DNA of 19,598 nucleotides, from positions 1-19,598 of the forward strand of contig NW_021836407.1 in assembly GCF_006345805.1 (NCBI RefSeq), in the 5' to 3' direction. The notes below the pieces were generated by a model. The model had not been told where the DNA came from, searched no databases, and saw only the letters and a list, made by a program, of their open reading frames with translations. Numbering within the stretch: position 1 is the stretch's first letter; every line of letters starts with the position of its first letter. This document shows positions 1 to 19,598 of this stretch, piece after piece. A program made the translations under genes and the position numbers. Source of the stretch: Octopus sinensis. Lineage: Eukaryota.

Positions 1-691
1 ATATCATATGCAAGGAACTTGTTAAATTACATAATATATTACGCAATTTATTACTCAATTTATTACATAATTCAAGTACCCCCATATCATATGCAAGGAA
101 CTTGTAAAATTACATAATAATATATTACGCAATTGATTACGCAATTTTTACTCAATTTATTACATAATCTCAATACCCCCATATCCTTACATCTACGGAC
201 CATCCAAATGCATAATATATTACGCAATTTATTACTCAATTATTACATAATCTCACACAGTACCCCCATATCATATGCAAGAACCTTGTTAAATTGCATA
301 ATATATTACGCAATTTATTACTCAATTTATTACATAATCTCAAGTACCCCATATCATATGCAAGGAACTTGTTAAATTGCATAATATATTACGCAATTTA
401 TTACTCATTTATTACATAATCTCAAGTACTCCCCATATCATATGCAAGGAACTTGTTAAATTGCATAATATATTACGCATTTTTACTCAATTTATTACAT
501 AGTCTCAAGTACCCCCATATTATATCACAGGAACTTGTTAAATTCATAATATATTACGCAATTTATTACTCAATTTATTACATAATCTCAAGTACCCCCA
601 TATCCTTACAACTACGGACCATCCAAAATTGCATAATATATTACGCAATTTATTACTCAATTTATTACATAATCTTAAGTACCCCCATATC
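1..691 (+). repeat. 84-bp AT-rich satellite block S0 (partial, ~8 monomers)
   Basis: Tandem copies of CTCAAGTACCCCCATATCATATGCAAGGAACTTGTTAAATT(A/G)CATAATATATTACGCAATTTATTACTCAATTTATTACATAAT. The consensus is about 26% GC (22/84). Includes variant B monomers at 186 and 605. Confidence 0.97.
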
Positions 692-3600
692 CTTACAACT
701 ACGGACCATCCAAACTACGGACCATCAAGACAATTGCACGTGCACGTTGTTGTTGTTGCTTTGTTGCTATTTCTTGTATTGTTGTTCATTATATTGTAAT
801 ATCGTTCTTTCTGATTTCCTTGTATCTTATATTCTTGTACTCATTGTTATATTCCTCAATTCTTGTATCTAATCTGTTTATGATCCCATCTCTTATTCAA
901 TCGTTTCAAACATTCGAATGCCTAATCTGCTCAACAAATAACACTCGCAAGAGGCGAGAAAGTGCTTTGACTGTCAGAGAGATGTGCACCTATCTTGTGC
1001 CGGCTTAACAAAGATGTCATCTGCAGCCCTCGCAATCTGGAAATGTCCAGCGTGTCTCAGTGCTTGTCCCCTAAAGCCAGCACCCCTTCAAAATCCCCCA
1101 CTCCCGTCTCGTCCGGTTGTTTGTGACATCCCCTTCGAAGATTTGTTATCTCTCTTTTGCCGGTCTGCGCCGCGCACGGAAGATATGCATAAAAATTCCG
1201 AAAGCAGCTCGGATTGCCGTCGCCGACTCGCTCACGAAGACCATTGTAAACGCCCTCGATTCTGACCAGCCTGCTGATTGGCTGAAATTATTTTGCTTTG
1301 GTCCCATGGCAATTGGCACACCCTACAGGGAACCTAATTCGAAGCAGCGCGGTTCCCTGACTTCGCAATTAAAGAAAATTTGACTCTCTTCGACAAAAAT
1401 CCATTCACGGTCCTTCCTACTCCCCCCGCTGAATTTGAGACCCCTTTAACGAATAAACCTGAACGCACAAACCTTCGTAATAAAGTCCACGCCAAGCTTA
1501 TGGAAAACGATGTTAAAGCTGCTGTTCGCCTTGTGGCTTCCGATGACGTTGTTCTACCTCCGTCGGAAGAGCTTCTCGAGGCACTCAAACTTAAACATCC
1601 GGCTGCCCCCACCGACCTCCGTGCTTTGCCAGTCCTCTCTGGAACCCCTACACATTCCTTTACGCCCTCGGAGATCTTAAGCTGCATCGCGAGTTTCCCC
1701 CTCAGCAGCAGTGGTGGCGTGGACGGTCTTCGTCCTGGCCACCTACGTGACCTGACGTCCCCGGTTACAGGCGAGGCAAGAACCCGCCTGGTGAAGGCAA
1801 TTACTGCTCTTTGCAATCGGTTCTTCTCCGGCGACCTTATCCCGTATGCACGTGACTTATTCTTCTCTGCCAATCTCACTGCCTTGAGGAAGACCGATGG
1901 TGGAGTTCGCCCCATCGCTGTCGGAAATGTCTTCAGGAGGCTGGCTGCTAAGCTTGCTTGCAGGCTCGTCTCTACTGATCTTGGCGCATTTTTCGGACCT
2001 GTTCAACTTGGAGTTGCTGTCAAGAATGGATGTGAAGGCGCCGCCCACGCAATGAGATGTTATATCGCCAATGCGTCAGCCGATTCTCGCCATGACAGGG
2101 CACTTCTCAAACTTGACATCAAGAACGCATTTAACTGCATCCGCCGGGATCACTTCTGTCAGTTTGCTTCGACCAGTTCCCCGTTTTGTATCCCCTGGCG
2201 CTATTGTCATATGGAAGACCTAGCTCTCTAGTATTCGGTTCGGATATTATTCCTTCAAGTACGGGAGTTCAACAGGGCGATCCACTAGGTCCCCTTCTCT
2301 TTGCCTTGGAAATAAATGGAATAGCTCGGTCGGTTTCTTCCGACTGAATATTTGGTATCTGGACGATGCCACTATTGGCGGCTCCCCAGAGACGATTTTA
2401 AGAGACGCTTTGTCGTTGGCACCTGCACTTCTGAGGATTGGATTGGAGATTAACCCCACCAAATCCGAATTAGTCGGTGTCAACATTCCTGATAAACGCC
2501 TTGACGACCTTTCATCGTCCCTCCGCACTGGTCTTGGCCAAGTGCGCGCGACTGACGTAAATGATCTCCGGATCCTTGGATCCCCCATCCTGCCGACTGC
2601 TATTAAGACTGATCTTCTTACCAAACATTCCACGTTAACTATTTTGCTGGACCGCCTCACGTTTTTGGACAGCCACGTCGGCCTGTTTCTTGCGAAAAAC
2701 TTTTTCGCCCTGCCTAAATTACTCTACTCCCTCAGAAGTGCACCTTGTTACCTACATGAGGACATTCTCACTGATCTCGGCGACTCCCTTCGTTCGAAGA
2801 TCGAATCAATATGCAATGTCGAGTTCGACTCTTTGGGGTGGAGTCAAGCTTCACTCCCCGTACGCCACGGAGGCCTTGGAATTCGGTGTCCGAATGATGT
2901 TGCACTGCCTGCCTACCTGTCGTCACTTTCTTCATGCCAGAAACTCATGGGCACGGTTCTTCCAACCGATTTTGAACATTACGTGCCCTCTGAGTTATCA
3001 TCGGCGGTCGTAAAGTGGCACTCGCTAGGACTGGAAATCCCAGAGGATCAGCATAAGCAATTTGTTTGGGACGAAGTCCGCCTACAATCCCGAATCCAAT
3101 CTTTACGTACATCTTTCGACCAACACCGCTTGGCCTGCTTTGAGACGGCATGTCGCCCTCACAGCGGAGCCTGGCTAAATGCCACTCCACTGCCGAGCAT
3201 TGGGAACCTTCTGGACTGCGAGTCCGTACGCACTGGAATCTTTTACGTCTCGGTCTTCGCCTATGCGAGCCACATGTCTGCCGCTGTGGCGCGAAAATCT
3301 GTCGCTTTGGATTGCACGCTCTATCGTGCAGACGCAGTGCTGGCCGCATCCCGCGTCACGCCGCTCTTAACGACCTTATCAGGAGAGCCCTGGAAGTCGC
3401 CGGAATCCCCTCCCTGCTTGAACCCACTGGGATCGATCGGGGAGACGGAAAAAGGCCTGACGGGATAACTGTGTTTCCTTTCAACAGGGGGAAGCCTCTC
3501 ACCTGGGATGCCACGTGTGTGGACTCTTTCTCGCCTCAGAACCTGCTGATGTCGGCCTCCGCTCCTGGATCTATTGTCACAACCGCGGAATGCAAAAAGA

Positions 3601-3877
3601 TGCGGAAGTACTCCTCACTTACGGAGAAGTTCCAATTCCTTCCATTCGCGGTTGAGACTTCCGGTTCCTTGGGCAGTAAGGCAATCAGCTTCGTTCAGGA
3701 GATCGGATCCCGCATGTCTGCCATCACAGGCGACGCCCGCGAATCGAGATGGTTTTTCGAGCGGATATCCTTGCGATAGAACGCTCTAATTCTTTCTCGA
3801 TCGCGTCGGCTTCCCGCACTTGAAGCTTTTAATTAATTAACTTGTAGTTATTGGTTGGTTTTCAAAAAAAAAAAAAA
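692..3877 (+). mobile_element. Full-length RLE-type non-LTR retrotransposon (CRE-like), copy 1
   Basis: Starts CTTACAACTACGGACC directly after the target motif at 671-691. Near-identical to copy 2 over its whole length. Ends in a 40-nt 3' UTR plus an A14 tail (3864-3877). Confidence 0.95.
880..3823 (+). pseudogene. PHD-RT-RLE ORF of copy 1, frameshifted as sequenced
   Basis: ATG at 880 and TGA at 3821-3823 match copy 2. About seven private 1-nt indels (near 951, 1148, 1376, 2157, 2343, 3240, 3770) split it into ORF-track fragments. These may be sequencing errors rather than true inactivation. Confidence 0.75.
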
Positions 3878-5942
3878 TCTCAATACCCCCATATCATATG
3901 CAAGGAACTTGTTAAATTACATAATATATTACGCAATTTATTACTCAATTAATTACATAATCTCAAGTACCTCCATATCATATGCAAGGAACTTGTTAAA
4001 TTACATAATATATTACGCAATTTATTACTCAATTTATTACATAATCTCAAGTACCCCCATATCATATGCAAGGAACTTGTTAAATTACATAATATATTAC
4101 GCAATTTATTACTCAATTTATTACATAATCTCAAGTACCCCCATATCATATGCAGGAACTTGTTAAATTGCATAATATATTACGCAATTTATTACTCAAT
4201 TTATTACATAATCTCAAGTACCCCCATATCATATGCAAGGAACTTGTTAAATTGCATAATATATTACGCAATTTATTACTCAATTTATTACATAATCTCA
4301 AGTACCCCCATATCATATGCAAGGAACTTGTTAAATTACATAATATATTACGCAATTTATTACTCAATTTATTACATAGTCTCAAGTACCCCCATATTAT
4401 ATGCAAGGAACTTGTTAAATTACATAATATATTACGCAATTGATTACGCAATTTATTACTCAATTTATTACATAATCTCATACCCCCATATCCTTAACAT
4501 CTACGGACCATCCAAAATTGCATAATATATTACGCAATTTATTACTCAATTTATTACATATCTCAAGTACCCCATATCATATGCAAGAACTTGTTAAATT
4601 GCATAATATATTACGCATTTATTACTCAATTTATTACATAGTCTCAAGTACCCCCATATTATATGCAAGGAACTTGTTAATTACATACATAACGCAAATT
4701 ACTATATTACAAATTCATTTCAATCTCAATTAATTACATATTATCTCGCAAGTCTTACCCCCATATTCAAGTACTAACAATGAAGAACTTGTTTTATCCT
4801 ACATAAAATATTACAGTTTTATCAAGAATATACGCAATTATTACTCAATTTATTACATAATCTCAAGTACCCCCATATCATATGCAAGGAACTTGTTAAA
4901 TTACATAATATATTACGCAATTTATTACTCAATTTATTACATAATCTCAAGTACCCCCATATCATACAAAGGACTTGTTAAATTACATAATATATTACGC
5001 AATTTATTACACAAGCAATTATACATATCTCAAGTACTCCCATATCCTACATCTACGGACCATCCAAATGCATAATATATTACGCAATTTATTACTCAAT
5101 TTATTACATAATCTCAAGTACCCCCATCATATGCAAGGAACTTGTAAATTACATAATATATTACGCAATTGATTACGCAATTTATTACTCAATATTACTA
5201 ATCTCAATACCCCCATATCCTTACATCTACGGACCTCCAATTGCATAATATATTACGCAATTTATTACTCAATTTATTACATAATCTCAAGTACCCCCAT
5301 ATCATATGCAAGAAACTTGTTAATTGCATAATATATTACGCAATTTATTACTCAATTTATTACATAATCCATAAATTACATAATATATTACGCAATTTAT
5401 TACAAAATTTATTACATAATCTCAAGTACCCCCATATCATATGCAAGGAACTTGTTAAATTGCATAATGTATTACGCAATTTATTACTCAATTTATTACA
5501 TAATCTCAAGTACCCCCATATCATATGCAAGGAACTTGTTAAATTACATAATATATTACGCAATTTATTACTCAATTAATTACATAATCTCAAGTACCCC
5601 CATATCATATGCAAGGAACTTGTTAAATTACATAATATATTACGCAATTTATTACTCAATTTATTACATAATCTTAAGTACCCCCATATCATATGCAAGG
5701 AACTTGTTAAATTACATAATATATTACGCAATTTATTACTCAATTTATTACATAATCTCAAGTACCCACATATCATATGCAAGGAACTTGTTAAATTGCA
5801 TAATATATTACGCAATTTATTACTCAATTTATTACATAGTCTCAAGTACCCCCATATCATATGCTAGGAACTTGTTAAATTACATAATATATTACGCAAT
5901 TTATTACTCAATTTATTACATAATCTCAAGTACCCCCATATC
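3878..5942 (+). repeat. 84-bp satellite block S1 (~24 monomers, 2065 bp)
   Basis: Period of 84 read directly (monomer starts at 5505, 5589, 5673, 5757, 5841). B monomers at 4493, 5047 and 5220. Degraded stretch at about 4680-4860. Confidence 0.97.
5922..5942 (+). repeat. 5' copy of apparent target-site duplication for element copy 2 (AATCTCAAGTACCCCCATATC)
   Basis: The same sequence follows the poly(A) at 9137/9139-9157. The equivalent motif precedes every copy (671-691, 10651-10670, 14967-14987, 19285-19305) and follows every tail (3878-3895, 13870-13888, 18176-18194). Confidence 0.75.
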
Positions 5943-6130
5943 CTTACAACTACGGACCATCCAAACTACGGACCATCAAGACAATTGCACGTGCACGTTG
6001 TTGTTGTTGCTTTGTTGCTATTTCTTGTATTGTTGTTCATTATATTGTAATATCGTTCTTTCTGATTTCCTTGTATCTTATATTCTTGTACTCATTGTTA
6101 TATTCCTCAATTCTTGTATCTAATCTGTTT

Positions 6131-9079
6131 ATGATCCCATCTCTTATTCAATCGTTTCAAACATTCGAATGCCTAATCTGCTCAACAAATAACACTCGCA
6201 AGAAGGCGAGAAAGTGCTTTGACTGTCAGAGAGATGTGCACCTATCTTGTGCCGGCTTAACAAAGATGTCATCTGCAGCCCTCGCAATCTGGAAATGTCC
6301 AGCGTGTCTCAGTGCTTGTCCCCTAAAGCCAGCACCCCTTCAAAATCCCCCACTCCCGTCTCGTCCGGTTGTTTGTGACATCCCCTTCGAAGATTTGTTA
6401 TCCTCTTTTGCCGGTCTGCGCCGCGCACGGAAGATATGCATAAAAATTCCGAAAGCAGCTCGGATTGCCGTCGCCGACTCGCTCACGAAGACCATTGTAA
6501 ACGCCCTCGATTCTGACCAGCCTGCTGATTGGCTGAAATTATTTTGCTTTGGTCCCATGGCAATTGGCACACCCTACAGGGAACCTAATTCGAAGCAGCG
6601 CGGTTCCCTGACTTCGCAATTAAAGGAAAATTTGACTCTCTTCGACAAAAATCCATTCACGGTCCTTCCTACTCCCCCCGCTGAATTTGAGACCCCTTTA
6701 ACGAATAAACCTGAACGCACAAACCTTCGTAATAAAGTCCACGCCAAGCTTATGGAAAACGATGTTAAAGCTGCTGTTCGCCTTGTGGCTTCCGATGACG
6801 TTGTTCTACCTCCGTCGGAAGAGCTTCTCGAGGCACTCAAACTTAAACATCCGGCTGCCCCCACCGACCTCCGTGCTTTGCCAGTCCTCTCTGGAACCCC
6901 TACACATTCCTTTACGCCCTCGGAGATCTTAAGCTGCATCGCGAGTTTCCCCCTCAGCAGCAGTGGTGGCGTGGACGGTCTTCGTCCTGGCCACCTACGT
7001 GACCTGACGTCCCCGGTTACAGGCGAGGCAAGAACCCGCCTGGTGAAGGCAATTACTGCTCTTTGCAATCGGTTCTTCTCCGGCGACCTTATCCCGTATG
7101 CACGTGACTTATTCTTCTCTGCCAATCTCACTGCCTTGAGGAAGACCGATGGTGGAGTTCGCCCCATCGCTGTCGGAAATGTCTTCAGGAGGCTGGCTGC
7201 TAAGCTTGCTTGCAGGCTCGTCTCTACTGATCTTGGCGCATTTTTCGGACCTGTTCAACTTGGAGTTGCTGTCAAGAATGGATGTGAAGGCGCCGCCCAC
7301 GCAATGAGATGTTATATCGCCAATGCGTCAGCCGATTCTCGCCATGACAGGGCACTTCTCAAACTTGACATCAAGAACGCATTTAACTGCATCCGCCGGG
7401 ATCACTTCCTGTCAGTTTGCTTCGACCAGTTCCCCGTTTTGTATCCCCTGGCGCTATTGTCATATGGAAGACCTAGCTCTCTAGTATTCGGTTCGGATAT
7501 TATTCCTTCAAGTACGGGAGTTCAACAGGGCGATCCACTAGGTCCCCTTCTCTTTGCCTTGGGAATAAATGGAATAGCTCGGTCGGTTTCTTCCGAACTG
7601 AATATTTGGTATCTGGACGATGCCACTATTGGCGGCTCCCCAGAGACGATTTTAAGAGACGCTTTGTCGTTGGCACCTGCACTTCTGAGGATTGGATTGG
7701 AGATTAACCCCACCAAATCCGAATTAGTCGGTGTCAACATTCCTGATAAACGCCTTGACGACCTTTCATCGTCCCTCCGCACTGGTCTTGGCCAAGTGCG
7801 CGCGACTGACGTAAATGATCTCCGGATCCTTGGATCCCCCATCCTGCCGACTGCTATTAAGACTGATCTTCTTACCAAACATTCCACGTTAACTATTTTG
7901 CTGGACCGCCTCACGTTTTTGGACAGCCACGTCGGCCTGTTTCTTGCGAAAAACTTTTTCGCCCTGCCTAAATTACTCTACTCCCTCAGAAGTGCACCTT
8001 GTTACCTACATGAGGACATTCTCACTGATCTCGGCGACTCCCTTCGTTCGAAGATCGAATCAATATGCAATGTCGAGTTCGACTCTTTGGGGTGGAGTCA
8101 AGCTTCACTCCCCGTACGCCACGGAGGCCTTGGAATTCGGTGTCCGAATGATGTTGCACTGCCTGCCTACCTGTCGTCACTTTCTTCATGCCAGAAACTC
8201 ATGGGCACGGTTCTTCCAACCGATTTTGAACATTACGTGCCCTCTGAGTTATCATCGGCGGTCGTAAAGTGGCACTCGCTAGGACTGGAAATCCCAGAGG
8301 ATCAGCATAAGCAATTTGTTTGGGACGAAGTCCGCCTACAATCCCGAATCCAATCTTTACGTACATCTTTCGACCAACACCGCTTGGCCTGCTTTGAGAC
8401 GGCATGTCGCCCTCACAGCGGAGCCTGGCTAAATGCCACTCCACTGCCGAGCATTGGGAACCTTCTGGACTGCGAGTCCGTACGCACTGGAATCTGTTTA
8501 CGTCTCGGTCTTCGCCTATGCGAGCCACATGTCTGCCGCTGTGGCGCGAAAATCTGTCGCTTTGGATTGCACGCTCTATCGTGCAGACGCAGTGCTGGCC
8601 GCATCCCGCGTCACGCCGCTCTTAACGACCTTATCAGGAGAGCCCTGGAAGTCGCCGGAATCCCCTCCCTGCTTGAACCCACTGGGATCGATCGGGGAGA
8701 CGGAAAAAGGCCTGACGGGATAACTGTGTTTCCTTTCAACAGGGGGAAGCCTCTCACCTGGGATGCCACGTGTGTGGACTCTTTCTCGCCTCAGAACCTG
8801 CTGATGTCGGCCTCCGCTCCTGGATCTATTGTCACAACCGCGGAATGCAAAAAGATGCGGAAGTACTCCTCACTTACGGAGAAGTTCCAATTCCTTCCAT
8901 TCGCGGTTGAGACTTCCGGTTCCTTGGGCAGTAAGGCAATCAGCTTCGTTCAGGAGATCGGATCCCGCATGTCTGCCATCACAGGCGACGCCCGCGAATC
9001 GAGATGGTTTTTCGAGCGGATATCCCTTGCGATAGAACGCTCTAATTCTTTCTCGATCGCGTCGGCTTCCCGCACTTGA
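6131..9079 (+). CDS. Non-LTR retrotransposon polyprotein: PHD finger + reverse transcriptase + zinc knuckle + restriction-like endonuclease (982 aa from first ATG; ORF track starts at TTG 6071)
   Basis: RT motifs GGVDG, RPIAVGNVFRRL, LDIKNAFN (D at 7367), QQGDPLGPLLF (7523), YLDD (7610-7621), GLEINPTKS and LRILGSPI. Also SLPVRHGGLG, the knuckle CRC-x9-H-x3-C, RHAALND, KRPDG, WDATC, KKMRKY and PFAVETSG. The CRE-clade assignment is from motif recognition, not a phylogeny. Confidence 0.96.
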   Translation: MIPSLIQSFQTFECLICSTNNTRKKARKCFDCQRDVHLSCAGLTKMSSAALAIWKCPACLSACPLKPAPLQNPPLPSRPVVCDIPFEDLLSSFAGLRRARKICIKIPKAARIAVADSLTKTIVNALDSDQPADWLKLFCFGPMAIGTPYREPNSKQRGSLTSQLKENLTLFDKNPFTVLPTPPAEFETPLTNKPERTNLRNKVHAKLMENDVKAAVRLVASDDVVLPPSEELLEALKLKHPAAPTDLRALPVLSGTPTHSFTPSEILSCIASFPLSSSGGVDGLRPGHLRDLTSPVTGEARTRLVKAITALCNRFFSGDLIPYARDLFFSANLTALRKTDGGVRPIAVGNVFRRLAAKLACRLVSTDLGAFFGPVQLGVAVKNGCEGAAHAMRCYIANASADSRHDRALLKLDIKNAFNCIRRDHFLSVCFDQFPVLYPLALLSYGRPSSLVFGSDIIPSSTGVQQGDPLGPLLFALGINGIARSVSSELNIWYLDDATIGGSPETILRDALSLAPALLRIGLEINPTKSELVGVNIPDKRLDDLSSSLRTGLGQVRATDVNDLRILGSPILPTAIKTDLLTKHSTLTILLDRLTFLDSHVGLFLAKNFFALPKLLYSLRSAPCYLHEDILTDLGDSLRSKIESICNVEFDSLGWSQASLPVRHGGLGIRCPNDVALPAYLSSLSSCQKLMGTVLPTDFEHYVPSELSSAVVKWHSLGLEIPEDQHKQFVWDEVRLQSRIQSLRTSFDQHRLACFETACRPHSGAWLNATPLPSIGNLLDCESVRTGICLRLGLRLCEPHVCRCGAKICRFGLHALSCRRSAGRIPRHAALNDLIRRALEVAGIPSLLEPTGIDRGDGKRPDGITVFPFNRGKPLTWDATCVDSFSPQNLLMSASAPGSIVTTAECKKMRKYSSLTEKFQFLPFAVETSGSLGSKAISFVQEIGSRMSAITGDARESRWFFERISLAIERSNSFSIASASRT
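6170..6307 (+). other. PHD finger (C4HC3) domain at the N-terminus of the ORF
   Basis: CLIC-x11-CFDC-x4-H-x2-C-x13-W-x-CPAC matches canonical PHD spacing, including the Trp two residues before the seventh ligand. Confidence 0.9.
8534..8866 (+). other. Zinc knuckle plus restriction-like endonuclease (RLE) catalytic region
   Basis: CxC..H..C at 8534-8584, RH at 8609, PD at 8711-8716, second Asp at 8762 and K-x2-KY at 8852-8866. This is the motif order typical of R2-group RLE domains. Confidence 0.9.
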
Positions 9080-9138
9080 AGCTTTTAATTAATTAACTTG
9101 TAGTTATTGGTTGGTTTTCAAAAAAAAAAAAAAAAAAA
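9080..9138 (+). other. 3' UTR (40 nt) and poly(A) tail
   Basis: AGCTTTTAATTAATTAACTTGTAGTTATTGGTTGGTTTTC followed by an A-run. Identical in copies 1-4, with tails of 14, 19, 23 and 21 A. Confidence 0.9.
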
Positions 9139-10670
9139 TCTCAAGTACCCCCATATCATATGCAAGGAACTTGTTAAATTACATAATATATTACGCAATT
9201 TATTACTCAATTAATTACATAATCTCAAGTACCGCCATATCATATGCAAGGAACTTGTTAAATTACATAATATATTACGCAATTTATTACTCAATTAATT
9301 ACATAATCTCAAGTACCCCCATATCATATGCAAGGAACTTGTTAAATTACATAATATATTACGCAATTTATTACTCAATTTATTACATAATCTTAAGTAC
9401 CCCCATATCATATGCAAGGAACTTGTTAAATTGCATAATATATTACGCAATATATTACTCAATTTATTACATAATCTCAAGTACCCCCATATCATATGCA
9501 AGGAACTTGTTAAATTGCATAATATATTACGCAATTTATTACTCAATTTATTACATAATCTCAAGTACCCCCATATCATATGCAAGGAACTTGTTAAATT
9601 ACATAATATATTACGCAATTTATTACTCAATTTATTACATAGTCTCAAGTACCCCCATATTATATGCAAGGAACTTGTTAAATTACATAATATATTACGC
9701 AATTTATTACTCAATTAATTACATAATCTTAGTACCCCCATATCATATGCAAGGAACTTGTTAAATTACATAATATATTACGCAATTTATTACTCAATTT
9801 ATTACATAATCTCAAGTACCCACATATCATATGCAAGGAACTTGTTAAATTACATAATATATTACGCAATTTATTACGCAATTTATTACATAATCTCAAG
9901 TACCCCCATATCCTTACATCTACGGATCATCCAAAATTGCTAATATATTACGCAATTTAATACATAATCTCAAGTACCCCAATATCATATGCAAGGAACT
10001 TGTTAAATTACATAATATATTACGCAATTTATTACTCAATTTATTACATAATTTCAAGTACCCCCATATCATATGCAAGGAACTTGTAAAATTACATAAT
10101 ATATTACGCAATTGATTACGCAATTTATTACTCAATTTATTACATAATCTCAATACCCCCATATCCTTACATCTACGGACCATCCAAAATTGCATAATAT
10201 ATTACGCAATTTATTACTCAATTTATTACATAATCTCAGTACCCCCATATCATATGCAAGAACTTGTTAAATTGCATAATATATTACGCAATTTATTACT
10301 CAATTTATTACATAATCTCAAGTACCCCCATATCATATGCAAGGAACTTGTTAAATTGCATAATATATTACGCAATTTATTACTCAATTTATTACATAAT
10401 CTCAAGTACCCCATATCATATGCAAGGAACTTGTTAAATTGCATAATATATTACGCAATTTATTACTCAATTTATTACATAATCTCAAGTACTCCCATAT
10501 CCTTACATCTACGGACCATCCAAAATTGCATAATATATTACGCAATTTATTACTCAATTTATTACATAATCTCAAGTACCCCCATATCATATGCAAGGAA
10601 CTTGTTAAATTACATAATATATTACGCAATTTATTACTCATTTATTACATAATCTCAAGTACCCCCTATC
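9139..10670 (+). repeat. 84-bp satellite block S2 (18 monomers, 1532 bp)
   Basis: Clean tandem monomers. B monomers at 9913, 10166 and 10502. A 74-bp variant at 9895-9968 and a 96-bp variant at 10053-10148. Confidence 0.97.
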
Positions 10671-13600
10671 CTTACAACTACGGACCATCCAAACTACGGA
10701 CCATCAAGACAATTGCACGTGCACGTTGTTGTTTGTTGCTTTGTTGCTATTTCTTGTATTGTTGTTCATTATATTGTAATATCGTTCTTTCTGATTTCCT
10801 TGTATCTTATATTCTTGTACTCATTGTTATATTCCTCAATTCTTGTATCTAATCTGTTTATGATCCCATCTCTTATTCAATCGTTTCAAACATTCGAATG
10901 CCTAATCTGCTCAACAAATAACACTCGCAAGAAGCGAGAAAGTGCTTTGACTGTCAGAGAGATGTGCACCTATCTTGTGCCGGCTTAACAAAGATGTCAT
11001 CTGCAGCCCTCGCAATCTGGAAATGTCCAGCGTGTCTCAGTGCTTGTCCCCTAAAGCCAGCACCCCTTCAAAATCCCCCACTCCCGTCTCGTCCGGTTGT
11101 TTGTGACATCCCCTTCGAAGATTTGTTATCCTCTTTTGCCGGTCTGCGCCGCGCACGGAAGATATGCATAAAAATTCCGAAAGCAGCTCGGATTGCCGTC
11201 GCCGACTCGCTCACGAAGACCATTGTAAACGCCCTCGATTCTGACCAGCCTGCTGATTGGCTGAAATTATTTTGCTTTGGTCCCATGGCAATTGGCACAC
11301 CCTACAGGGAACCTAATTCGAAGCAGCGCGGTTCCCTGACTTCGCAATTAAAGGAAAATTTGACTCTCTTCGACAAAAATCCATTCACGGTCCTTCCTAC
11401 TCCCCCCGCTGAATTTGAGACCCCTTTAACGAATAACCTGAACGCACAAACCTTCGTAATAAAGTCCACGCCAAGCTTATGGAAAACGATGTTAAGCTGC
11501 TGTTCGCCTTGTGGCTTCCGATGACGTTGTTCTACCTCCGTCGGAAGAGCTTCTCGAGGCACTCAAACTTAAACATCCGGCTGCCCCCACCGACCTCCGT
11601 GCTTTGCCAGTCCTCTCTGGAACCCCTACACATTCCTTTACGCCCTCGGAGATCTTAAGCTGCATCGCGAGTTTCCCCCTCAGCAGCAGTGGTGGCGTGG
11701 ACGGTCTTCGTCCTGGCCACCTACGTGACCTGACGTCCCCGGTTACAGGCGAGGCAAGAACCCGCCTGGTGAAGGCAATTACTGCTCTTGCAATTTTCTC
11801 GGTTCTTCTCCGGCGACCTTATCCCGTATGCACGTGACTTATTCTTCTCTGCCAATCTCACTGCATTGAGGAAGACCGATGGTGGAGTTCGCCCCATCGC
11901 TGTCGGAAATGTCTTCAGGAGGCTGGCTGCTAAGCTTGCTTGCAGGCTCGTCTCTACTGATCTTGGCGCATTTTTCGGACCTGTTCAACTTGGAGTTGCT
12001 GTCAAGAATGGATGTGAAGGCGCCGCCCACGCAATGAGATGTTATATCGCCAATGCGTCAGCCGATTCTCGCCATGACAGGGCACTTCTCAAACTTGACA
12101 TCAAGAACGCATTTAACTGCATCCGCCGGGATCACTTCCTGTCAGTTTGCTTCGACCAGTTCCCCCCGTTTTGTATCCCCTGGCGCTATTGTCATATGGA
12201 AGACCTAGCTCTCTAGTATTCGGTTCGGATATTATTCCTTCAAGTACGGGAGTTCAACAGGGCGATCCACTAGGTCCCCTTCTCTTTGCCTTGGGAATAA
12301 ATGGAATAGCTCGGTCGGTTTCTTCCGAACTGAATATTTGGTATCTGGACGATGCCACTATTGCGGCTCCCCAGAGACGATTTTAAGAGACGCTTTGTCG
12401 TTGGCACCTGCACTTCTGAGGATTGGATTGGAGATTAACCCCACCAAATCCGAATTAGTCGGTGTCAACATTCCTGATAAACGCCTTGACGACCTTTCAT
12501 CGTCCCTCCGCACTGGTCTTGGCCAAGTGCGCGCGACTGACGTAAATGATCTCCGGATCCTTGGATCCCCCATCCTGCCGACTGCTATTAAGACTGATCT
12601 TCTTACCAAACATTCCACGTTAACTATTTTGCTGGACCGCCTCACGTTTTTGGACAGCCACGTCGGCCTGTTTCTTGCGAAAAACTTTTTCCCCTGCCTA
12701 AATTACTCTACTCCCTCAGAAGTGCACCTTGTTGCCTACATGAGGACATTCTCACTGATCTCGGCGACTCCCTTCGTTCGAAGATCGAATCAATATGCAA
12801 TGTCGAGTTCGACTCTTTGGGGTGGAGTCAAGCTTCACTCCCCGTACGCCACGGAGGCCTTGGAATTCGGTGTCCGAATGATGTTGCACTGCCTGCCTAC
12901 CTGTCGTCACTTTCTTCATGCCAGAAACTCATGGGCACGGTTCTTCCAACCGATTTTGAACATTACGTGCCCTCTGAGTTATCATCGGCGGTCGTAAAGT
13001 GGCACTCGCTAGGACTGGAATCCCAGAGGATCAGCATAAGCAATTTGTTTGGGACGAAGTCCGCCTACAATCCCGAATCCAATCTTTACGTACATCTTTC
13101 GACCAACACCGCTTGGCCTGCTTTGAGACGGCATGTCGCCCTCACAGCGGAGCCTGGCTAAATGCCACTCCACTGCCGAGCATTGGGAACCTTCTGGACT
13201 GCGAGTCCGTACGCACTGGAATCTGTTTACGTCTCGGTCTTCGCCTATGCGAGCCACATGTCTGCCGCTGTGGCGCGAAAATCTGTCGCTTTGGATTGCA
13301 CGCTCTATCGTGCAGACGCAGTGCTGGCCGCATCCCGCGTCACGCGCGCTCTTAACGACCTTATCAGGAGAGCCCTGGAAGTCGCCGGAATCCCCTCCCT
13401 GCTTGAACCCACTGGGATCGATCGGGGAGACGGAAAAAGGCCTGACGGGATAACTGTGTTTCCTTTCAACAGGGGGAAGCCTCTCACCTGGGATGCCACG
13501 TGTGTGACTCTTTCTCGCCTCAGAACCTGCTGATTCGGCCTCCGCTCCTGGATCTATTGTCACAACCGCGGAATGCAAAAAGATGCGGAAGTACTCCTCA

Positions 13601-13869
13601 CTTACGGAGAAGTTCCAATTCCTTCCATTCGCGGTTGAGACTTCCGGTTCCTTGGGCAGTAAGGCAATCAGCTTCGTTCAGGAGATCGATCCCGCATGTC
13701 TGCCATCACAGGCGACGCCCGCGAATCGAGATGGTTTTTCGAGCGGATATCCCTTGCGATAGAACGCTCTAATTCTTTCTCGATCGCGTCGGCTTCCCGC
13801 CCTTGAAGCTTTTAATTAATTAACTTGTAGTTATTGGTTGGTTTTCAAAAAAAAAAAAAAAAAAAAAAA
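10671..13869 (+). mobile_element. Full-length CRE-like retrotransposon, copy 3
   Basis: Same 5' junction, body and 3' UTR as copy 2. A23 tail at 13847-13869. Confidence 0.95.
10860..13806 (+). pseudogene. PHD-RT-RLE ORF of copy 3, frameshifted as sequenced
   Basis: ATG at 10860 and TGA at 13804-13806. Multiple private small indels, while all domain motifs remain visible in the ORF fragments. Possibly sequencing error. Confidence 0.75.
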
Positions 13870-14987
13870 TCTCAAGTACCCCCATATCATATGCAAGAAC
13901 TTGTTAATTAACTTTTTAAATACATAATCTATTACGCAATTTATTACTCAATTTATTACATATCTCAAGTACCCCCATATTATATGCAAGGAACTTGTTA
14001 AATTACATAATATATTACGCAATTTAATTACTCAATTAATTACATAATCTTAAGTACCCCCATATCATATGCAAGGAACTTGTTAAATACATAATATTAC
14101 GCAATTTATTACTCAATTATTACATAATCTCAAGTACCCCTATCATATGCAAGGAACTTGTTAAATTACATAATAATTACGCAATTTATTACGCAATTTA
14201 TTACATAATCTCAAGTACCCCCATATCTTACATCTACGGATCATCCAAAATTGCTAATATATTACGCAATTAATACATATCTCAAGTACCCCAATATCAT
14301 ATGCAAGGAACTTGTTAAATTACATAATATATTACGCAATTTATTACTCAATTTATTACATAATCTCAAGTACCCCCATATCATATGCAAGGAACTTGTA
14401 AAATTACATAATATATTACGCAATTTATTACGCAATTTATTACTCAATTTATTACATAATCTCAATACCCCCATATCCTTACATCTACGGACCATCCAAA
14501 ATTGCATAATATATTACGCAATTTATTACTCAATTTATTACATAATCTCAAGTACCCCCATATCATATGCAAGAAACTTGTTAAATTGCATAATATATTA
14601 CGCAATTTATTACTCAATTTATTACATAATCTCAAGTACCCCCATATCATATGCAAGGAACTTGTTAAATTGCATAATATATTACGCAATTTATTACTCA
14701 ATTTATTACATAATCTCAAGTACCCCCATATCATATGCAAGGAACTTGTTAAATTGCATAATATATTACGCAATTTATTACTCAATTTATTACATAATCT
14801 CAAGTACTCCCATATCCTTACATCTACGGACCATCCAAAATTGCATAATATATTACGCAATTTATTACTCAATTTATTACATAATCTCAAGTACCCCCAT
14901 ATCATATGCTAGGAACTTGTTAAATTACATAATATATTACGCAATTTATTACTCAATTTATTACATAATCTCAAGTACCCCCATATC
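13870..14987 (+). repeat. 84-bp satellite block S3 (13 monomers, 1118 bp)
   Basis: Tandem monomers with B monomers at 14227, 14478 and 14817. Confidence 0.97.
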
Positions 14988-17900
14988 CTTACAACTACGG
15001 ACCATCCAAACTACGGACCATCAAGACAATTGCACGTGCACGTTGTTGTTGTTGCTTTGTTGCTATTTCTTGTATTGTTGTTCATTATATTGTAATATCG
15101 TTCTTTCTGATTTCCTTGTATCTTATATTCTTGTACTCATTGTTATATTCCTCAATTCTTGTATCTAATCTGTTTATGATCCCATCTCTTATTCAATCGT
15201 TTCAAACATTCGAATGCCTAATCTGCTCAACAAATAACACTCGCAAGAAGGCGAGAAAGTGCTTTGACTGTCAGAGAGATGTGCACCTATCTTGTGCCGG
15301 CTTAACAAAGATGTCATCTGCAGCCCTCGCAATCTGGAAATGTCCAGCGTGTCTCAGTGCTTGTCCCCTAAAGCCAGCACCCCTTCAAAATCCCCACTCC
15401 CGTCTCGTCCGGTTGTTTGTGACATCCCCTTCGAAGATTTGTTATCCTCTTTTGCCGGTCTGCGCCGCGCACGGAAGATATGCATAAAAATTCCGAAAGC
15501 AGCTCGGATTGCCGTCGCCGACTCGCTCACGAAGACCATTGTAAACGCCCTCGATTCTGACCAGCCTGCTGATTGGCTGAAATTATTTTGCTTTGGTCCC
15601 ATGGCAATTGGCACACCCTACAGGGAACCTAATTCGAAGCAGCGCGGTTCCCTGACTTCGCAATTAAAGGAAAATTTGACTCTCTTCGACAAAATCCATT
15701 CACGGTCCTTCCTACTCCCCCCGCTGAATTTGAGACCCCTTTAACGAATAAACCTGAACGCACAAACCTTCGTAATAAAGTCCACGCCAAGCTTATGGAA
15801 AACGATGTTAAAGCTGCTGTTCGCGCTTGTGGCTTCCGATGACGTTGTTCTACCTCCGTCGGAAGAGCTTCTCGAGGCACTCAAACTTAAACATCCGGCT
15901 GCCCCCACCGACCTCCGTGCTTTGCCAGTCCTCTCTGGAACCCCTACACATTCCTTTACGCCCTCGGAGATCTTAAGCTGCATCGCGAGTTTCCCCCTCA
16001 GCAGCAGTGGTGGCGTGGACGGTCTTCGTCCTGGCCACCTACGTGACCTGACGTCCCCGGTTACAGGCGAGGCAAGAACCCGCCTGGTGAAGGCAATTAC
16101 TGCTCTTTGCAATCGGTTCTTCTCCGCGACCTATCCCGTATGCACGTGACTTATTCTTCTCTGCCAATCTCACTGCATTGAGGAAGACCGATGGTGGAGT
16201 TCGCCCCATCGCTGTCGGAAATGTCTTCAGGAGGCTGGCTGCTAAGCTTGCTTGCAGGCTCGTCTCTACTGATCTTGGCGCATTTTTCGGACCTGTTCAA
16301 CTTGGAGTTGCTGTCAAGATGGATGTGAAGGCGCCGCCCACGCAATGAGATGTTATATCGCCAATGCGTCAGCCGATTCTCGCCATGACAGGGCACTTCT
16401 CAAACTTGACATCAAGAACGCATTTAACTGCATCCGCCGGGATCACTTCCTGTCAGTTTGCTTCGACCAGTTCCCCGTTTTGTATCCCCTGGCGCTATTG
16501 TCATATGGAAGACCTAGCTCTCTAGTATTCGGTTCGGATATTATTCCTTCAAGTACGGGAGTTCAACAGGGCGATCCACTAGGTCCCCTTCTCTTTGCCT
16601 TGGGAATAAATGGAATAGCTCGGTCGGTTTCTTCCGAACTGAATATTTGGTATCTGGACGATGCCACTATTGGCGGCTCCCCAGAGACGATTTTAAGAGA
16701 CGCTTTGTCGTTGGCACCTGCACTTCTGAGGATTGGATTGGAGATTAACCCCACCAAATCCGAATTAGTCGGTGTCAACATTCTGATAAACGCCTTGACG
16801 ACCTTTCATCGTCCCTCCGCACTGGTCTTGGCCAAGTGCGCGCGACTGACGTAAATGATCTCCGGATCCTTGGATCCCCCATCCTGCCGACTGCTATTAA
16901 GACTGATCTTCTTACCAAACATTCCACGTTAACTATTTTGCTGGACCGCCTCACGTTTTGGACAGCCACGTCGGCCTGTTTCTTGCGAAAAACTTTTTCG
17001 CCCTGCCTAAATTACTCTACTCCCTCAGAAGTGCACCTTGTTGCCTACATGAGGACATTCTCACTGATCTCGGCGACTCCCTTCGTTCGAAGATCGAATC
17101 AATATGCAATGTCGAGTTCGACTCTTTGGGGTGGAGTCAAGCTTCACTCCCCGTACGCCACGGAGGCCTTGGAATTCGGTGTCCGAATGATGTTGCACTG
17201 CCTGCCTACCTGTCGTCACTTTCTTCATGCCAGAAACTCATGGGCACGGTTCTTCCAACCGATTTTGAACATTACGTGCCCTCTGAGTTATCATCGGCGG
17301 TCGTAAAGTGGCACTCGCTAGGACTGGAAATCCCAGAGGATCAGCATAAGCAATTTGTTTGGGACGAAGTCCGCCTACAATCCCGAATCCAATCTTACGT
17401 ACATCTTTCGACCAACACCGCTTGGCCTGCTTTGAGACGGCATGTCGCCCTCACAGCGGAGCCTGGCTAAATGCCACTCCACTGCCGAGCATTGGGAACC
17501 TTCTGGACTGCGAGTCCGTACGCACTGGAATCTGTTTACGTCTCGGTCTTCGCCTATGCGAGCCACATGTCTGCCGCTGTGGCGCGAAAATCTGTCGCTT
17601 TGGATTGCACGCTCTATCGTGCAGACGCAGTGCTGGCCGCATCCCGCGTCACGCCGCTCTTAACGACCTTATCAGGAGAGCCCTGGAAGTCGCCGGAATC
17701 CCCTCCCTGCTTGAACCCACTGGGATCGATCGGGGAGACGGAAAAAGGCCTGACGGGATAACTGTGTTTCCTTTCAACAGGGGGAAGCCTCTCACCTGGG
17801 ATGCCACGTGTGTGGACTCTTTCTCGCCTCAGAACCTGCTGAGTCGGCCTCCGCTCCTGGATCTATTGTCACAAGCGGAATGCAAAAAGATGCGGAAGTA

Positions 17901-18175
17901 CTCCTCACTTACGGAGAAGTTCCAATTCCTTCCATTCGCGGTTGAGACTTCCGGTTCCTTGGGCAGTAAGGCAATCAGCTTTGTTCAGGAGATCGGATCC
18001 CGCATGTCTGCCATCACAGGCGACGCCCGCGAATCGAGATGGTTTTTCGAGCGGATATCCCTTGCGATAGAACGCTCTAATTCTTTCTCGATCGCGTCGG
18101 CTTCCCGCACTTGAAGCTTTTAATTAATTAACTTGTAGTTATTGGTTGGTTTTCAAAAAAAAAAAAAAAAAAAAA
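14988..18175 (+). mobile_element. Full-length CRE-like retrotransposon, copy 4
   Basis: Same 5' junction, body and 3' UTR as copy 2. A21 tail at 18155-18175. Confidence 0.95.
15176..18114 (+). pseudogene. PHD-RT-RLE ORF of copy 4, frameshifted as sequenced
   Basis: ATG at 15176 and stop at 18114, with the same C-terminus SIASASRT. Many private 1-2 nt deletions, possibly sequencing error. Confidence 0.75.
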
Positions 18176-19305
18176 TCTCAAGTACCCCCATATCATATGC
18201 AAGGAACTTGTTAAAATTAACTAACTTGTTAAATACATAATATATTACGCAATTTATTACTCAATTTAATTACATAATCTCAAGTACCCCCATATCATAT
18301 GCAAGGAACTTGTTAAATACATAATATATTACGCAATTTATTACTCAATTAATTACATAATCTTAAGTACCCCCATCATCATATGCAAGGAACTTGTTAA
18401 ATTACATAATATTACGCAATTTATTACTCAATTTATTACATAATCTCAAGTACCCCACATATCATATGCAAGGAACTTGTTAAATTACATAATATTACGC
18501 AATTTATTACGCAATTATTACATAATCTCAAGTACCCATATCCTTACATCTACGATCATCCAAAATTGCTAATATATTACGCAATTTAATACATAATCTC
18601 AAGTACCCCAATATCATATGCAAGGAACTTGTTAAATTACATAATATATTACGCAATTTATTACTCAATTTATTACATAATTTCAAGTACCCCATATCAT
18701 ATGCAAGGAACTTTGTAAATTACATAATATATTACGCAATTGATTACGCAATTTATTACTCATATATATGAATTATTACATAATCTCAAACCCCATATCC
18801 TTACATCTACGGACCATCCAAAATTGCATAATATATTACGCAATTATTACTCATTTATTACATAATCTCAAGTACCCCCATATCATATGCAAGAAACTTG
18901 TTAATTGCCATAATATATTACGCAATTTATTACTCAATTATTACATAATCTCAAGTACCCCCATATCATATGCAAGGAACTTGTTAAATTGCATAATATA
19001 TTACGCAATTTATTACTCAATTTATTACATAATCTCAAGTACTCCCATATCATATGCAAGGAACTTGTTAAATTGCATAATATATTACGCAATTTATTAC
19101 TCAATTATTACATAATCTCAAGTACTCCCATATCCTTACATCTACGGACCATCCAAAATTGCATAATATATTACGCAATTTATTACTCAATTTATTACAT
19201 AATCTCAAGTACCCCCATATCATATGCTAGGAACTTGTTAAATTACATAATATATTACGCAATTTATTACTCAATTTATTACATAATCTCAAGTACCCCC
19301 ATATC
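18176..19305 (+). repeat. 84-bp satellite block S4 (13 monomers, 1130 bp)
   Basis: Same order of variant monomers as S3. B monomers at 18543, 18800 and 19135. Noisier sequence. Confidence 0.96.
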
Positions 19306-19598
19306 CTTACAACTACGGACCATCCAAACTACGGACCATCAAGACAATTGCACGTGCACGTTGTTGTTGTTGCTTTGTTGCTATTTCTTGTATTGTGTTC
19401 ATTATTTGTAATATCGTTCTTTCTGATCCTTGTATCTTATATTCTGTACTCATGTTATATTTCCTCAATTCTTGTATCTAATCTGTTTATGATCCCATCT
19501 CTTATTCAATCGTTTCAAACATTCGAATGCCTAATCTGCTCAACAAATAACACTCGCAAGAAGGCGAGAAAGTGCTTTGACTGTCAGAGAGATGTGCA
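19306..19598 (+). mobile_element. CRE-like retrotransposon copy 5, 5' part only (cut by window end)
   Basis: Same 5' junction and leader. ATG at 19489 and the start of the PHD finger (CLIC...CFDC). Confidence 0.93.

What the first reader, a model, noticed from the sequence alone, without database searches (positions are those of the whole stretch)
186..19157. Fourteen satellite monomers carry a copy of the retrotransposon's 5' tip
Seen: variant B monomers replace ATATGCAAGGAACTTGTT with CTTACATCTACGGACCATCCA. This starts at exactly the position where elements begin (after CATATC) and matches the element start CTTACAACTACGGACCATCCAAA at all but about one base. B segments begin at 186, 605, 4493, 5047, 5220, 9913, 10166, 10502, 14227, 14478, 14817, 18543, 18800 and 19135. 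All continue into the TGC allele of the satellite, mostly as AATTGC, and the element leader also has ...ACCATCAAGACAATTGCA. Inference A: B is the scar of an element deleted via AATTGCA microhomology, or of an aborted insertion, later amplified as a satellite subunit. That would be a transposon reshaping its own target. Inference B: the element captured B sequence at its 5' end and uses it for homology-guided full-length integration.
Basis: partly seen in the sequence, partly recalled or inferred. Interest (0 to 1): 0.72.

Follow-up and report, generated by a model that had tools for sequence, protein, structure and literature searches.

The report
Retrotransposon 5' tip scar in satellite
Some units of an 84-base satellite repeat carry the first 21-23 bases of an R2-like retrotransposon that sits in the same array; this is most likely one old insertion scar that was then copied along with the satellite, not fourteen separate events.

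Summary
Fourteen of about 75 monomers replace ATATGCAAGGAACTTGTTA with CTTACATCTACGGACCATCCAA, right after CATATC, where the five element copies begin.

The fourteen are not independent. They occupy three positions (B1, B2, B3) of a higher-order unit. The last three units (4317 and 4318 bp: element plus 13 monomers) are collinear duplicates. The elements were co-amplified with them: four copies differ by only 7 substitutions in 3.19 kb, and those track the flank variants. So "where elements begin" rests on one or two independent junctions.

Outside the patch, B2/B3 monomers match the TGC consensus (mostly 0-2 of 65; up to 5 in noisy copies). Inside it they are about half different, no better than out-of-register comparisons. 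B is therefore a foreign patch, and the only donor seen is the element's 5' end.

The similarity resumes at AATTGCA in the leader (chance about 0.001), after 18 bases that correspond to one unit of a 16-base tandem duplication plus two.

Best reading (about 0.55): one microhomology-mediated scar of a deleted or aborted insertion, later amplified. The element is an R2-architecture retrotransposon. No outside copy of the satellite or element was found.

The parts
692..3877 (+). Element copy 1 (3186 bp, poly(A) about 14). ORF broken by several 1-base indels. Preceded directly by B monomer 605.
5943..9138 (+). Element copy 2 (3196 bp, poly(A) about 19). The only copy with an intact ORF and no private indels.
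6131..9079 (+). Intact ORF, 982 aa from the first ATG: PHD-like zinc finger, reverse transcriptase, CCHC knuckle and restriction-like endonuclease. Whole-protein fold matches R2 proteins.
10671..13869 (+). Element copy 3 (3199 bp). ORF broken by many 1-base indels and a 5-base insertion.
14988..18175 (+). Element copy 4 (3188 bp). ORF broken by 1-base indels.
19306..19598 (+). Element copy 5, cut by the end of the window.
5948..5979 (+). 16-base tandem duplication in the leader: AACTACGGACCATCCA / AACTACGGACCATCAA, 15 of 16 identical. Present in all five copies. B monomers have only one unit.
5983..5989 (+). AATTGCA in the leader, 18 bases after the tip. It is the same heptamer that follows the tip in B. 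Chance of this is about 0.0014.
5923..5942 (+). Upstream copy of the apparent target-site duplication ATCTCAAGTACCCCCATATC (copy 2). The downstream copy is at 9139-9157, after the poly(A).
9139..9157 (+). Downstream copy of the apparent target-site duplication, followed by an A-type TAC monomer.
186..208 (+). B tip (B2 position: follows the long 95-97 bp monomer and is followed by the AAGAAC-marked monomer).
605..627 (+). B tip identical to the element tip (AA). Its monomer abuts element 1.
4493..4516 (+). B tip (B2 position) with one extra A.
5047..5068 (+). B tip (B3-like, preceded by a TACTCCC monomer), one T missing.
5220..5240 (+). B tip (B2 position) with 1-base deletions.
9913..9935 (+). 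B tip (B1 position: GGATC variant, short 74-bp backbone, TGCTAAT).
10166..10188 (+). B tip (B2 position).
10502..10524 (+). B tip (B3 position, one monomer upstream of element 3).
14227..14249 (+). B tip (B1 position).
14478..14500 (+). B tip (B2 position).
14817..14839 (+). B tip (B3 position, one monomer upstream of element 4).
18543..18564 (+). B tip (B1 position), one G missing.
18800..18822 (+). B tip (B2 position).
19135..19157 (+). B tip (B3 position, one monomer upstream of element 5).
10671..14987 (+). Macro-unit of 4317 bp (element 3 plus 13 monomers including B1, B2, B3). The next unit, 14988-19305, is 4318 bp and collinear with it.

Best explanation
What the locus is. An R2-architecture non-LTR retrotransposon (one ORF: PHD-like finger, reverse transcriptase, CCHC knuckle, restriction-like endonuclease) sits in an 84-bp AT-rich satellite. 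Its 3' poly(A) joins before (A)ATCTCAAG. Its 5' end joins 19-21 bases further on, after CATATC.

What B is. A normal TGC-allele monomer in which the 19 bases just downstream of that top-strand site were replaced by the element's first 21-23 bases.

Most likely mechanism. This happened once, as a scar, by one of two routes:
(a) Second-strand synthesis primed from the CATATC 3'-OH copied only the start of the cDNA. The nascent strand then re-annealed to the satellite at AATTGCA (or AA/AAA), and the 19-base flap and the rest of the cDNA were lost.
(b) A complete insertion was later deleted between the leader and the first downstream AATTGCA.
Either route restores the monomer phase automatically (87 against 84 bp) and ties B to the TGC allele.

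Donor. It probably lacked one unit of the 16-base tandem duplication now in the leader, so B preserves an older leader state.

Spread. The scarred monomer spread as part of a 3-4-monomer repeat (B-A-A(-A)). It spread again when a 4.3-kb unit of element plus 13 monomers was duplicated by unequal exchange.

Shown: the patch structure, the extended similarity, the collinear duplication, the protein architecture.
Inferred: the direction (element to B), the single origin, the cleavage geometry, and which of routes (a) and (b) applied.
For: - 17 tip copies against 0 expected, all + strand, only at element starts and B heads.
- B2/B3 backbones mostly differ at 0-2 of 65 positions from the TGC consensus (up to 5 in noisy copies), while the head is about half different.
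- In-register similarity of tip and replaced segment (10 of 21) equals the best out-of-register offsets, so B is not a diverged A.
- AATTGCA lies 18 bases after the tip in the leader. Chance of that heptamer within 40 bases is 0.0014.
- The 18 bases correspond to one unit of a 15/16-identical 16-base tandem duplication plus two.
- B1, B2 and B3 sit at the same positions with the same private variants in three collinear arrays.
- Element copies differ by 7 substitutions in 3.19 kb. Two of these split copies 1/2 from 3/4, as the 3' flank variants do.
- The 19-21 base target repeat flanks every copy.
- RT domain. Invariant CCHC and RPDG...WD.T...K motifs across 29 relatives. Model with pLDDT 88 matches R2 proteins over about 900 columns, E about 1e-22.
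Against: - No outside copy of the satellite or element could be found. So the age of B relative to the element, and B in element-free arrays, are untested.
- The AATTGCA route needs a donor leader without the duplication, plus a 1-2 base difference. No such element and no intermediate 'long B' is in the window.
- In a tandem array a 19-21 base duplication cannot be told from a 63-65 base target deletion.
- The T/A difference at tip position 7 is unexplained.
- Only one or two independent insertions define the element's 5' end.
Confidence: 0.55

Rival explanations
1. The tip next to each element is the head of a B monomer. The present insertion lies inside a B monomer. An element whose own start was ...AACTACGGACCATCAAGAC joined after B's ...CCAA(A) by AA(A) microhomology, with loss of about 42-45 bases of target. 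That would create the apparent 16-base tandem duplication. B itself would still be an older scar of the same family.
For: - The duplication boundary falls exactly where B leaves the element sequence.
- All element copies descend from one or two insertions, so one odd junction would be copied everywhere.
- In tandem DNA, duplication and deletion of target cannot be told apart.
Against: - The tip beside the elements has A at position 7, whereas 13 of 14 B tips have T.
- It needs a target deletion plus an earlier scar event, so more steps.
- A B derived from a leader reading ...ATCAAGACAATTGCA fits the B sequence worse than the duplication-later model.
Confidence: 0.15
2. B came first. B is an older satellite variant. 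The element picked up its head from B by 5' transduction or co-transcription. It now uses the tip as homology for annealing of the cDNA 3' end, as most R2 RNAs use about 28 bases of upstream rRNA.
For: - In R2, base-pairing of the cDNA to the upstream target is reported as the favoured way to prime the second strand (PMC13580325).
- The left edge of the similarity would automatically coincide with the A/B boundary.
- Elements lie 0 or 1 monomer downstream of a B.
Against: - B's head is a sharply bounded foreign patch with no other source in satellite or element, on either strand.
- The target repeated after the poly(A) is followed by an A-type monomer, so no B homology was used at the observed insertion.
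- The tip is 48% G+C with a CpG, unlike the satellite.
- No ribozyme or structured leader was found to process a co-transcript.
Confidence: 0.12
3. Recurrent scarring: B monomers arise repeatedly from independent aborted or deleted insertions, so several of the 14 are separate events.
For: B at 605 has the element's own AA variant and sits against element 1, unlike the other 13.
Against: - B1, B2 and B3 are at collinear positions with shared private variants.
- 13 tips share the same T and the same junction with AATTGC.
- With today's leader, a new AATTGCA-mediated event would give a long B, and none is seen.
- B at 605 is explained more simply by gene conversion or unequal exchange with the adjacent element tip.
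Confidence: 0.08
4. Assembly artefact: the macro-repeat and its B monomers come from misassembly of noisy long reads.
For: - Indel columns outnumber substitutions 45 to 7 among element copies.
- Noise is uneven along the window.
Against: - The B head is a 21-23 base block, not an indel error.
- It recurs with position-specific variants (B1 GGATC, TGCTAAT, the 12-base deletion) in three units.
- Units differ in length and content (5251, 4728, 4317, 4318 bp).
Confidence: 0.02

Closest known systems
R2 and other non-LTR retrotransposons with a restriction-like endonuclease (R2, R4, NeSL/Utopia, HERO, CRE clades)
   Same: - Single ORF with reverse transcriptase, C-terminal CCHC knuckle and PD-(D/E)xK endonuclease.
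- Whole-protein fold match to R2 structures.
- Poly(A) 3' end and insertion in a repeated target.
- A roughly 20-base target duplication is reported for reptile Utopia (PMC4640811).
   Different: - The target is an 84-bp satellite, not 28S rDNA, U2 snRNA or a microsatellite.
- The N-terminus is a PHD-like finger, not C2H2/Myb.
- No HDV-like ribozyme was found.
- Closest proteins are only 49% identical.
- The clade could not be assigned without Repbase.
R2 RNA carrying about 28 bases of upstream 28S rRNA for cDNA annealing (Eickbush et al. 2013, as summarised in PMC13580325)
   Same: Short sequence shared between the 5' end of the element and target DNA at the 5' junction.
   Different: In R2 the shared bases are target sequence carried by the RNA. 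Here the shared bases are foreign to the satellite and lie downstream of the junction in only about a fifth of the monomers. Nothing shows that they are used in integration.
Tandem R1 arrays separated by 33 bases of rDNA in Drosophila melanogaster, and TE dimers expanding into satellites (PMC5932611)
   Same: A site-specific non-LTR element plus a piece of its target becomes the unit of a tandem array that grows by unequal exchange.
   Different: Here the spacer is 13-24 satellite monomers, not one short target duplication. The element joined an existing satellite rather than founding one.
YURE/Utopia insertions in U2-derived satellite repeats of Ciona (PMC4640811)
   Same: An endonuclease-bearing (RLE) non-LTR element that lives in a satellite.
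   Different: That satellite derives from the family's ancestral gene target. No small-RNA origin was found for this satellite.
Solo LTRs and other transposon excision or deletion footprints
   Same: A short terminal remnant marks a former insertion.
   Different: Non-LTR elements normally leave 3' remnants (5' truncation). A 5'-tip-only remnant that restores the repeat phase and is then amplified is unusual.

Membership tests
Non-LTR retrotransposon with restriction-like endonuclease (R2-type architecture) | Reverse transcriptase domain | tested here: met
   Pfam RVT_1, E 1.3e-15, residues 337-533. Closest solved sequences are R2 proteins.
Non-LTR retrotransposon with restriction-like endonuclease (R2-type architecture) | C-terminal CCHC zinc knuckle followed by a PD-(D/E)xK endonuclease | tested here: met
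   Invariant C802, C804, H814, C818 and R860-P-D-G863, W877-D878, T880, K908 in 29 relatives. Model (pLDDT 88) aligns with R2 proteins over about 900 columns, E 7.7e-23.
Non-LTR retrotransposon with restriction-like endonuclease (R2-type architecture) | Poly(A) or simple 3' end and target-primed insertion signature (target duplication or small deletion) | tested here: met
   Poly(A) of 14-23 bases. A 19-21 base repeat, (A)ATCTCAAGTACCCCCATATC, lies on both sides of each full copy. It cannot be told from a 63-65 base deletion in tandem DNA.
Non-LTR retrotransposon with restriction-like endonuclease (R2-type architecture) | Site-specific insertion shown by independent copies at the same target position | tested here: inconclusive
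   Five copies at the same position, but they are segmental duplicates of one or two insertions. No outside copies were found.
R2 clade proper | Insertion in the 28S rRNA gene | tested here: not met
   Flanks are an 84-bp satellite. No rRNA match in Rfam.
R2 clade proper | N-terminal C2H2 zinc finger(s) and Myb motif | tested here: not met
   The N-terminus matches only PHD fingers, and weakly: Pfam PHD E 0.0049, below the cut-off, and PDB PHD domains.
R2 clade proper | HDV-like self-cleaving ribozyme at the 5' end | tested here: not met
   No Rfam hit, even at E up to 10, over positions 1-1000 or at gathering scores over the whole window. The leader folds worse than its shuffles, z +2.5.
Transposon co-amplified as part of a satellite higher-order unit | Element plus flanking repeats recur as collinear units with shared private variants | tested here: met
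   Units of 4317 and 4318 bp. Thirteen collinear monomers upstream of elements 3, 4 and 5. Element substitutions co-vary with flanks.
Microhomology-mediated insertion scar | Foreign patch with sharp borders, one border at the element's integration site and the other at a short shared motif | tested here: met
   Left border at CATATC|. Right border at AA(A) or AATTGCA, which is shared with the leader. Backbone otherwise consensus.
Microhomology-mediated insertion scar | Donor older than or coeval with the scar, and scar absent from lineages without the donor | not testable with these tools
   The species and its relatives are not in the searchable collections.

The most novel reading that the evidence does not exclude
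The tip copies are not inert. By seeding its target array with its own first 21-23 bases, the element may have created monomers that do one of three things:
- give the cDNA 3' end a place to anneal for second-strand priming (a self-made version of R2's upstream rRNA homology);
- start transcription;
- resist new insertions, because the 19 bases downstream of the cleavage site are gone.
The 80-plus bases of continuous similarity between a B head with its upstream monomer and an element 5' junction would also drive unequal exchange. That could explain the AA-type B at 605 and the varying unit lengths.
Probability: 0.1. Interest if true: 0.75.

Novelty: new variant of a known kind. Interest (0 to 1): 0.45.

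Why it matters
Non-LTR retrotransposons usually leave 5'-truncated copies, that is, 3' remnants. A remnant made only of the 5' tip, placed exactly at the top-strand site and restoring the repeat phase, would be a footprint of the least understood step of target-primed reverse transcription: second-strand priming and its failure.

The locus also shows a transposon altering about a fifth of its own target units and being copied passively as part of a 4.3-kb satellite unit. The scar gives a ready marker for tracing how the higher-order repeat grew.

If B keeps an older leader without the 16-base duplication, it also dates a change in the element's 5' end.

Tried and rejected
- Metagenome scan with CTACGGACCATCCAAA. 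The 16-mer was too short. All 120 loci are single chance hits in unrelated, mostly bacterial contigs, including a recurrent bacterial repeat.
- Protein search with the ORF that runs through the satellite, B and the element junction, meant to find the satellite in other assemblies. Nothing found.
- Main ORF search. Best hit 49% identity, so the species is not in the collection.
- Eight relatives' contigs (L121-L128). Their 5' ends cannot be defined. None carries ACTACGGACCATC in its leader. A 9-mer CTTACAACT in L124 and CTTACAC in L121 are too weak to count. Alignment of the leaders was uninformative.
- B as a diverged A monomer. Rejected: in-register similarity is no better than other offsets.
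- Small-RNA origin of the satellite or tip. The tip resembles the 5' end of 5S rRNA, but that is from memory only, and Rfam finds nothing.
- HDV-like ribozyme or structured leader. Not found.
- Splicing of a read-through transcript as the source of B. Rejected: no GT/AG at the borders.
- The insertion in the first monomer after elements 3 and 4 as a 3' UTR remnant. More simply a local tandem duplication of AACTTGTTAAATTAC.
- Literature search for the satellite sequence. Nothing found.


Full report
**What is in the window**

The 19.6 kb consist of an AT-rich 84-bp satellite, itself built of seven 12-bp sub-repeats. It is interrupted five times, in the same orientation, by a 3.19-kb element that ends in poly(A). 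The copies are at 692-3877, 5943-9138, 10671-13869, 14988-18175 and 19306 to the window end, which cuts the last copy.

Every copy begins after ...CCCCCATATC with CTTACAACTACGG. After the poly(A) the satellite resumes at TCTCAAGTACCCCCATATC and then ATATGC. The element is therefore flanked by a 19-21 base repeat of the target. In tandem DNA this cannot be told from a 63-65 base deletion.

**The element**

- Copy 2 has an intact ORF (6131-9079, 982 aa). The other full copies are broken by 1-base indels.
- The protein has a weak PHD-like finger and a reverse transcriptase domain.
- Its closest solved relatives by sequence are R2 proteins.
- In an alignment with 28 relatives, a CCHC knuckle and an RPDG...WD.T...K endonuclease motif are invariant.
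- A confident model (pLDDT 88) matches R2 proteins over about 900 columns, with E about 1e-22.
- It is therefore an R2-architecture (restriction-like endonuclease) non-LTR retrotransposon. It is not an R2 proper: the target is not rDNA, there are no C2H2/Myb motifs, and no ribozyme was found.
- Relatives are common in animal and marine assemblies but reach only 49% identity.

**The observation**

It is correct. The 21-mer occurs 17 times with up to 3 mismatches, against none expected. Five of these are element starts and twelve are B monomers. Two more B monomers carry indels. All 14 continue into the TGC allele. Thirteen differ from the element tip by T for A at position 7. The B at 605 is identical to the element tip and abuts element 1.

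**The fourteen are not fourteen events**

- The monomer table and the alignment of the arrays upstream of elements 3, 4 and 5 show thirteen collinear monomers.
- B sits at three fixed positions in them:
  - B1: short 74-bp backbone, GGATC, TGCTAAT.
  - B2: after a 95-bp monomer and before an AAGAAC-marked monomer.
  - B3: after a TACTCCC monomer, one monomer before the element.
- The units measure 4317 and 4318 bp.
- The B monomers in the first two arrays carry the same neighbour markers.
- The elements were copied along with the units. Four copies differ by 7 substitutions in 3.19 kb, and two of those split copies 1/2 from 3/4, exactly as the 3' flank variants do.
- Independent insertions into the same one of 13 monomers in three units would be improbable.
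- So the element's 5' end is defined here by one or two independent junctions.
- This resembles the tandem R1 arrays of Drosophila, which grew by unequal exchange (PMC5932611).

**What B is**

- Outside the head, B2 and B3 monomers mostly differ at 0-2 of 65 positions from the TGC consensus, and at up to 5 in noisy copies.
- The head is about half different from the A segment. That in-register similarity (10 of 21) is no better than several out-of-register offsets.
- Point mutation cannot produce so sharp a block, so B is a patch copied from elsewhere.
- The only other place the sequence occurs, on either strand, is the element's 5' end.
- This is the main argument for the direction element to B. 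A B-first history would need an unknown donor as well as a capture.

**How far the similarity goes**

- In the leader, the tip is followed by 18 bases and then AATTGCA, the heptamer that follows the tip in B.
- The chance of that heptamer within 40 bases is about 0.0014. This holds even though shared 7-mers in general are common between element and satellite.
- The 18 bases correspond to one unit of a 16-base tandem duplication, 15 of 16 identical, plus two bases.
- B therefore looks like a leader with one unit instead of two, fused to the satellite at AATTGCA.
- No long-B intermediate exists in the window.

**Mechanism**

With an R2-type enzyme, the bottom strand is nicked first and primes cDNA synthesis. 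The top strand is nicked later, and its 3'-OH primes the second strand on the cDNA's 3' end (PMC13580325). The first bases copied in that step are the element's 5' tip.

If synthesis stops after 20-30 bases, the nascent strand can pair with the intact bottom strand at AATTGCA (or AAA). The 19-base flap is then removed, and the result is exactly B:
- the left border is at the cleavage site;
- the phase is restored (87 against 84 bp);
- B is linked to the TGC allele.

A later deletion of a complete insertion between the same motifs gives the same product. I cannot separate these two routes.

**Inference B**

- The target repeat after each poly(A) is followed by an A-type monomer, so no B similarity was used at the insertion seen here.
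- The leader shows no ribozyme or stable fold for processing a co-transcript.
- It stays possible in principle because R2 does use upstream target homology (PMC13580325).

A third reading is that the present insertion sits inside a B monomer and that this created the duplication. It fits the borders but needs more steps, and it conflicts with the A/T difference at position 7.

**Limits**

- The species, the satellite and close copies of the element are absent from every collection I could search.
- Relatives' leaders gave no usable 5' ends.

**Verdict**

Its number of events was overstated. It is a new variant of known transposon-satellite interplay and is of moderate interest.

Noticed in passing
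window 692-18175 (four full element copies): Among the copies there are 45 indel columns but only 7 substitutions. Copy 2 and the array after it (about 5400-10700) are clean, while the rest is noisy. This ratio and patchiness point to uneven long-read consensus error rather than decay, so the 'broken' ORFs of copies 1, 3 and 4 may be intact in reality.
   Followed up: partly
window 4661-4879: Two strongly diverged monomers (107 and 112 bp) sit inside array 2. They are recognisable only by AACTTGT and TACCCCCATATT. They may be an older satellite variant or a foreign insert.
   Followed up: no
window 13889-13981 and 18195-18296: The first monomer after elements 3 and 4 carries a shared 9-18 base insertion (AATTAACT...AACTTGTT). 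It resembles the element's 3' UTR motif AATTAATTAACTTGT, but a local tandem duplication explains it more simply. It marks these two units as sister copies.
   Followed up: partly
window 3878-3895: The target repeat after element 1 reads TCTCAATACC (G missing). This is the same variant that ends the 95-bp monomer before every B2, which hints at exchange between these positions.
   Followed up: no
window 5304-5438: A 135-bp monomer contains a 52-bp internal duplication (TRF period 52, positions 5322-5421).
   Followed up: no
whole satellite, e.g. window 14251-15168: The 84-bp unit is 28 codons long and open in several frames. This gives stop-free ORFs of up to 305 aa that run through monomers and into the element leader. 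They have no homologues and are probably meaningless.
   Followed up: partly
window 186-208 and the other B tips: TCTACGGACCATCCA resembles the 5' end of animal 5S rRNA (TCTACGGCCATACCA). This is recalled from memory only. Rfam finds no 5S match at E up to 10.
   Followed up: partly
L126 3400-3641: A 49%-identical relative is followed within about 150 bases of its stop codon by a 36-bp tandem repeat (CAATTTACAGGAAATCCCTAATATACGAGCTTACAT). Living in satellites may therefore be common in this lineage.
   Followed up: no
relatives P0020, P0025, P0107: Some relatives carry a ubiquitin C-terminal hydrolase domain (PF00443) fused to the reverse transcriptase protein. Others carry a SAP domain (PF02037).
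   Followed up: no
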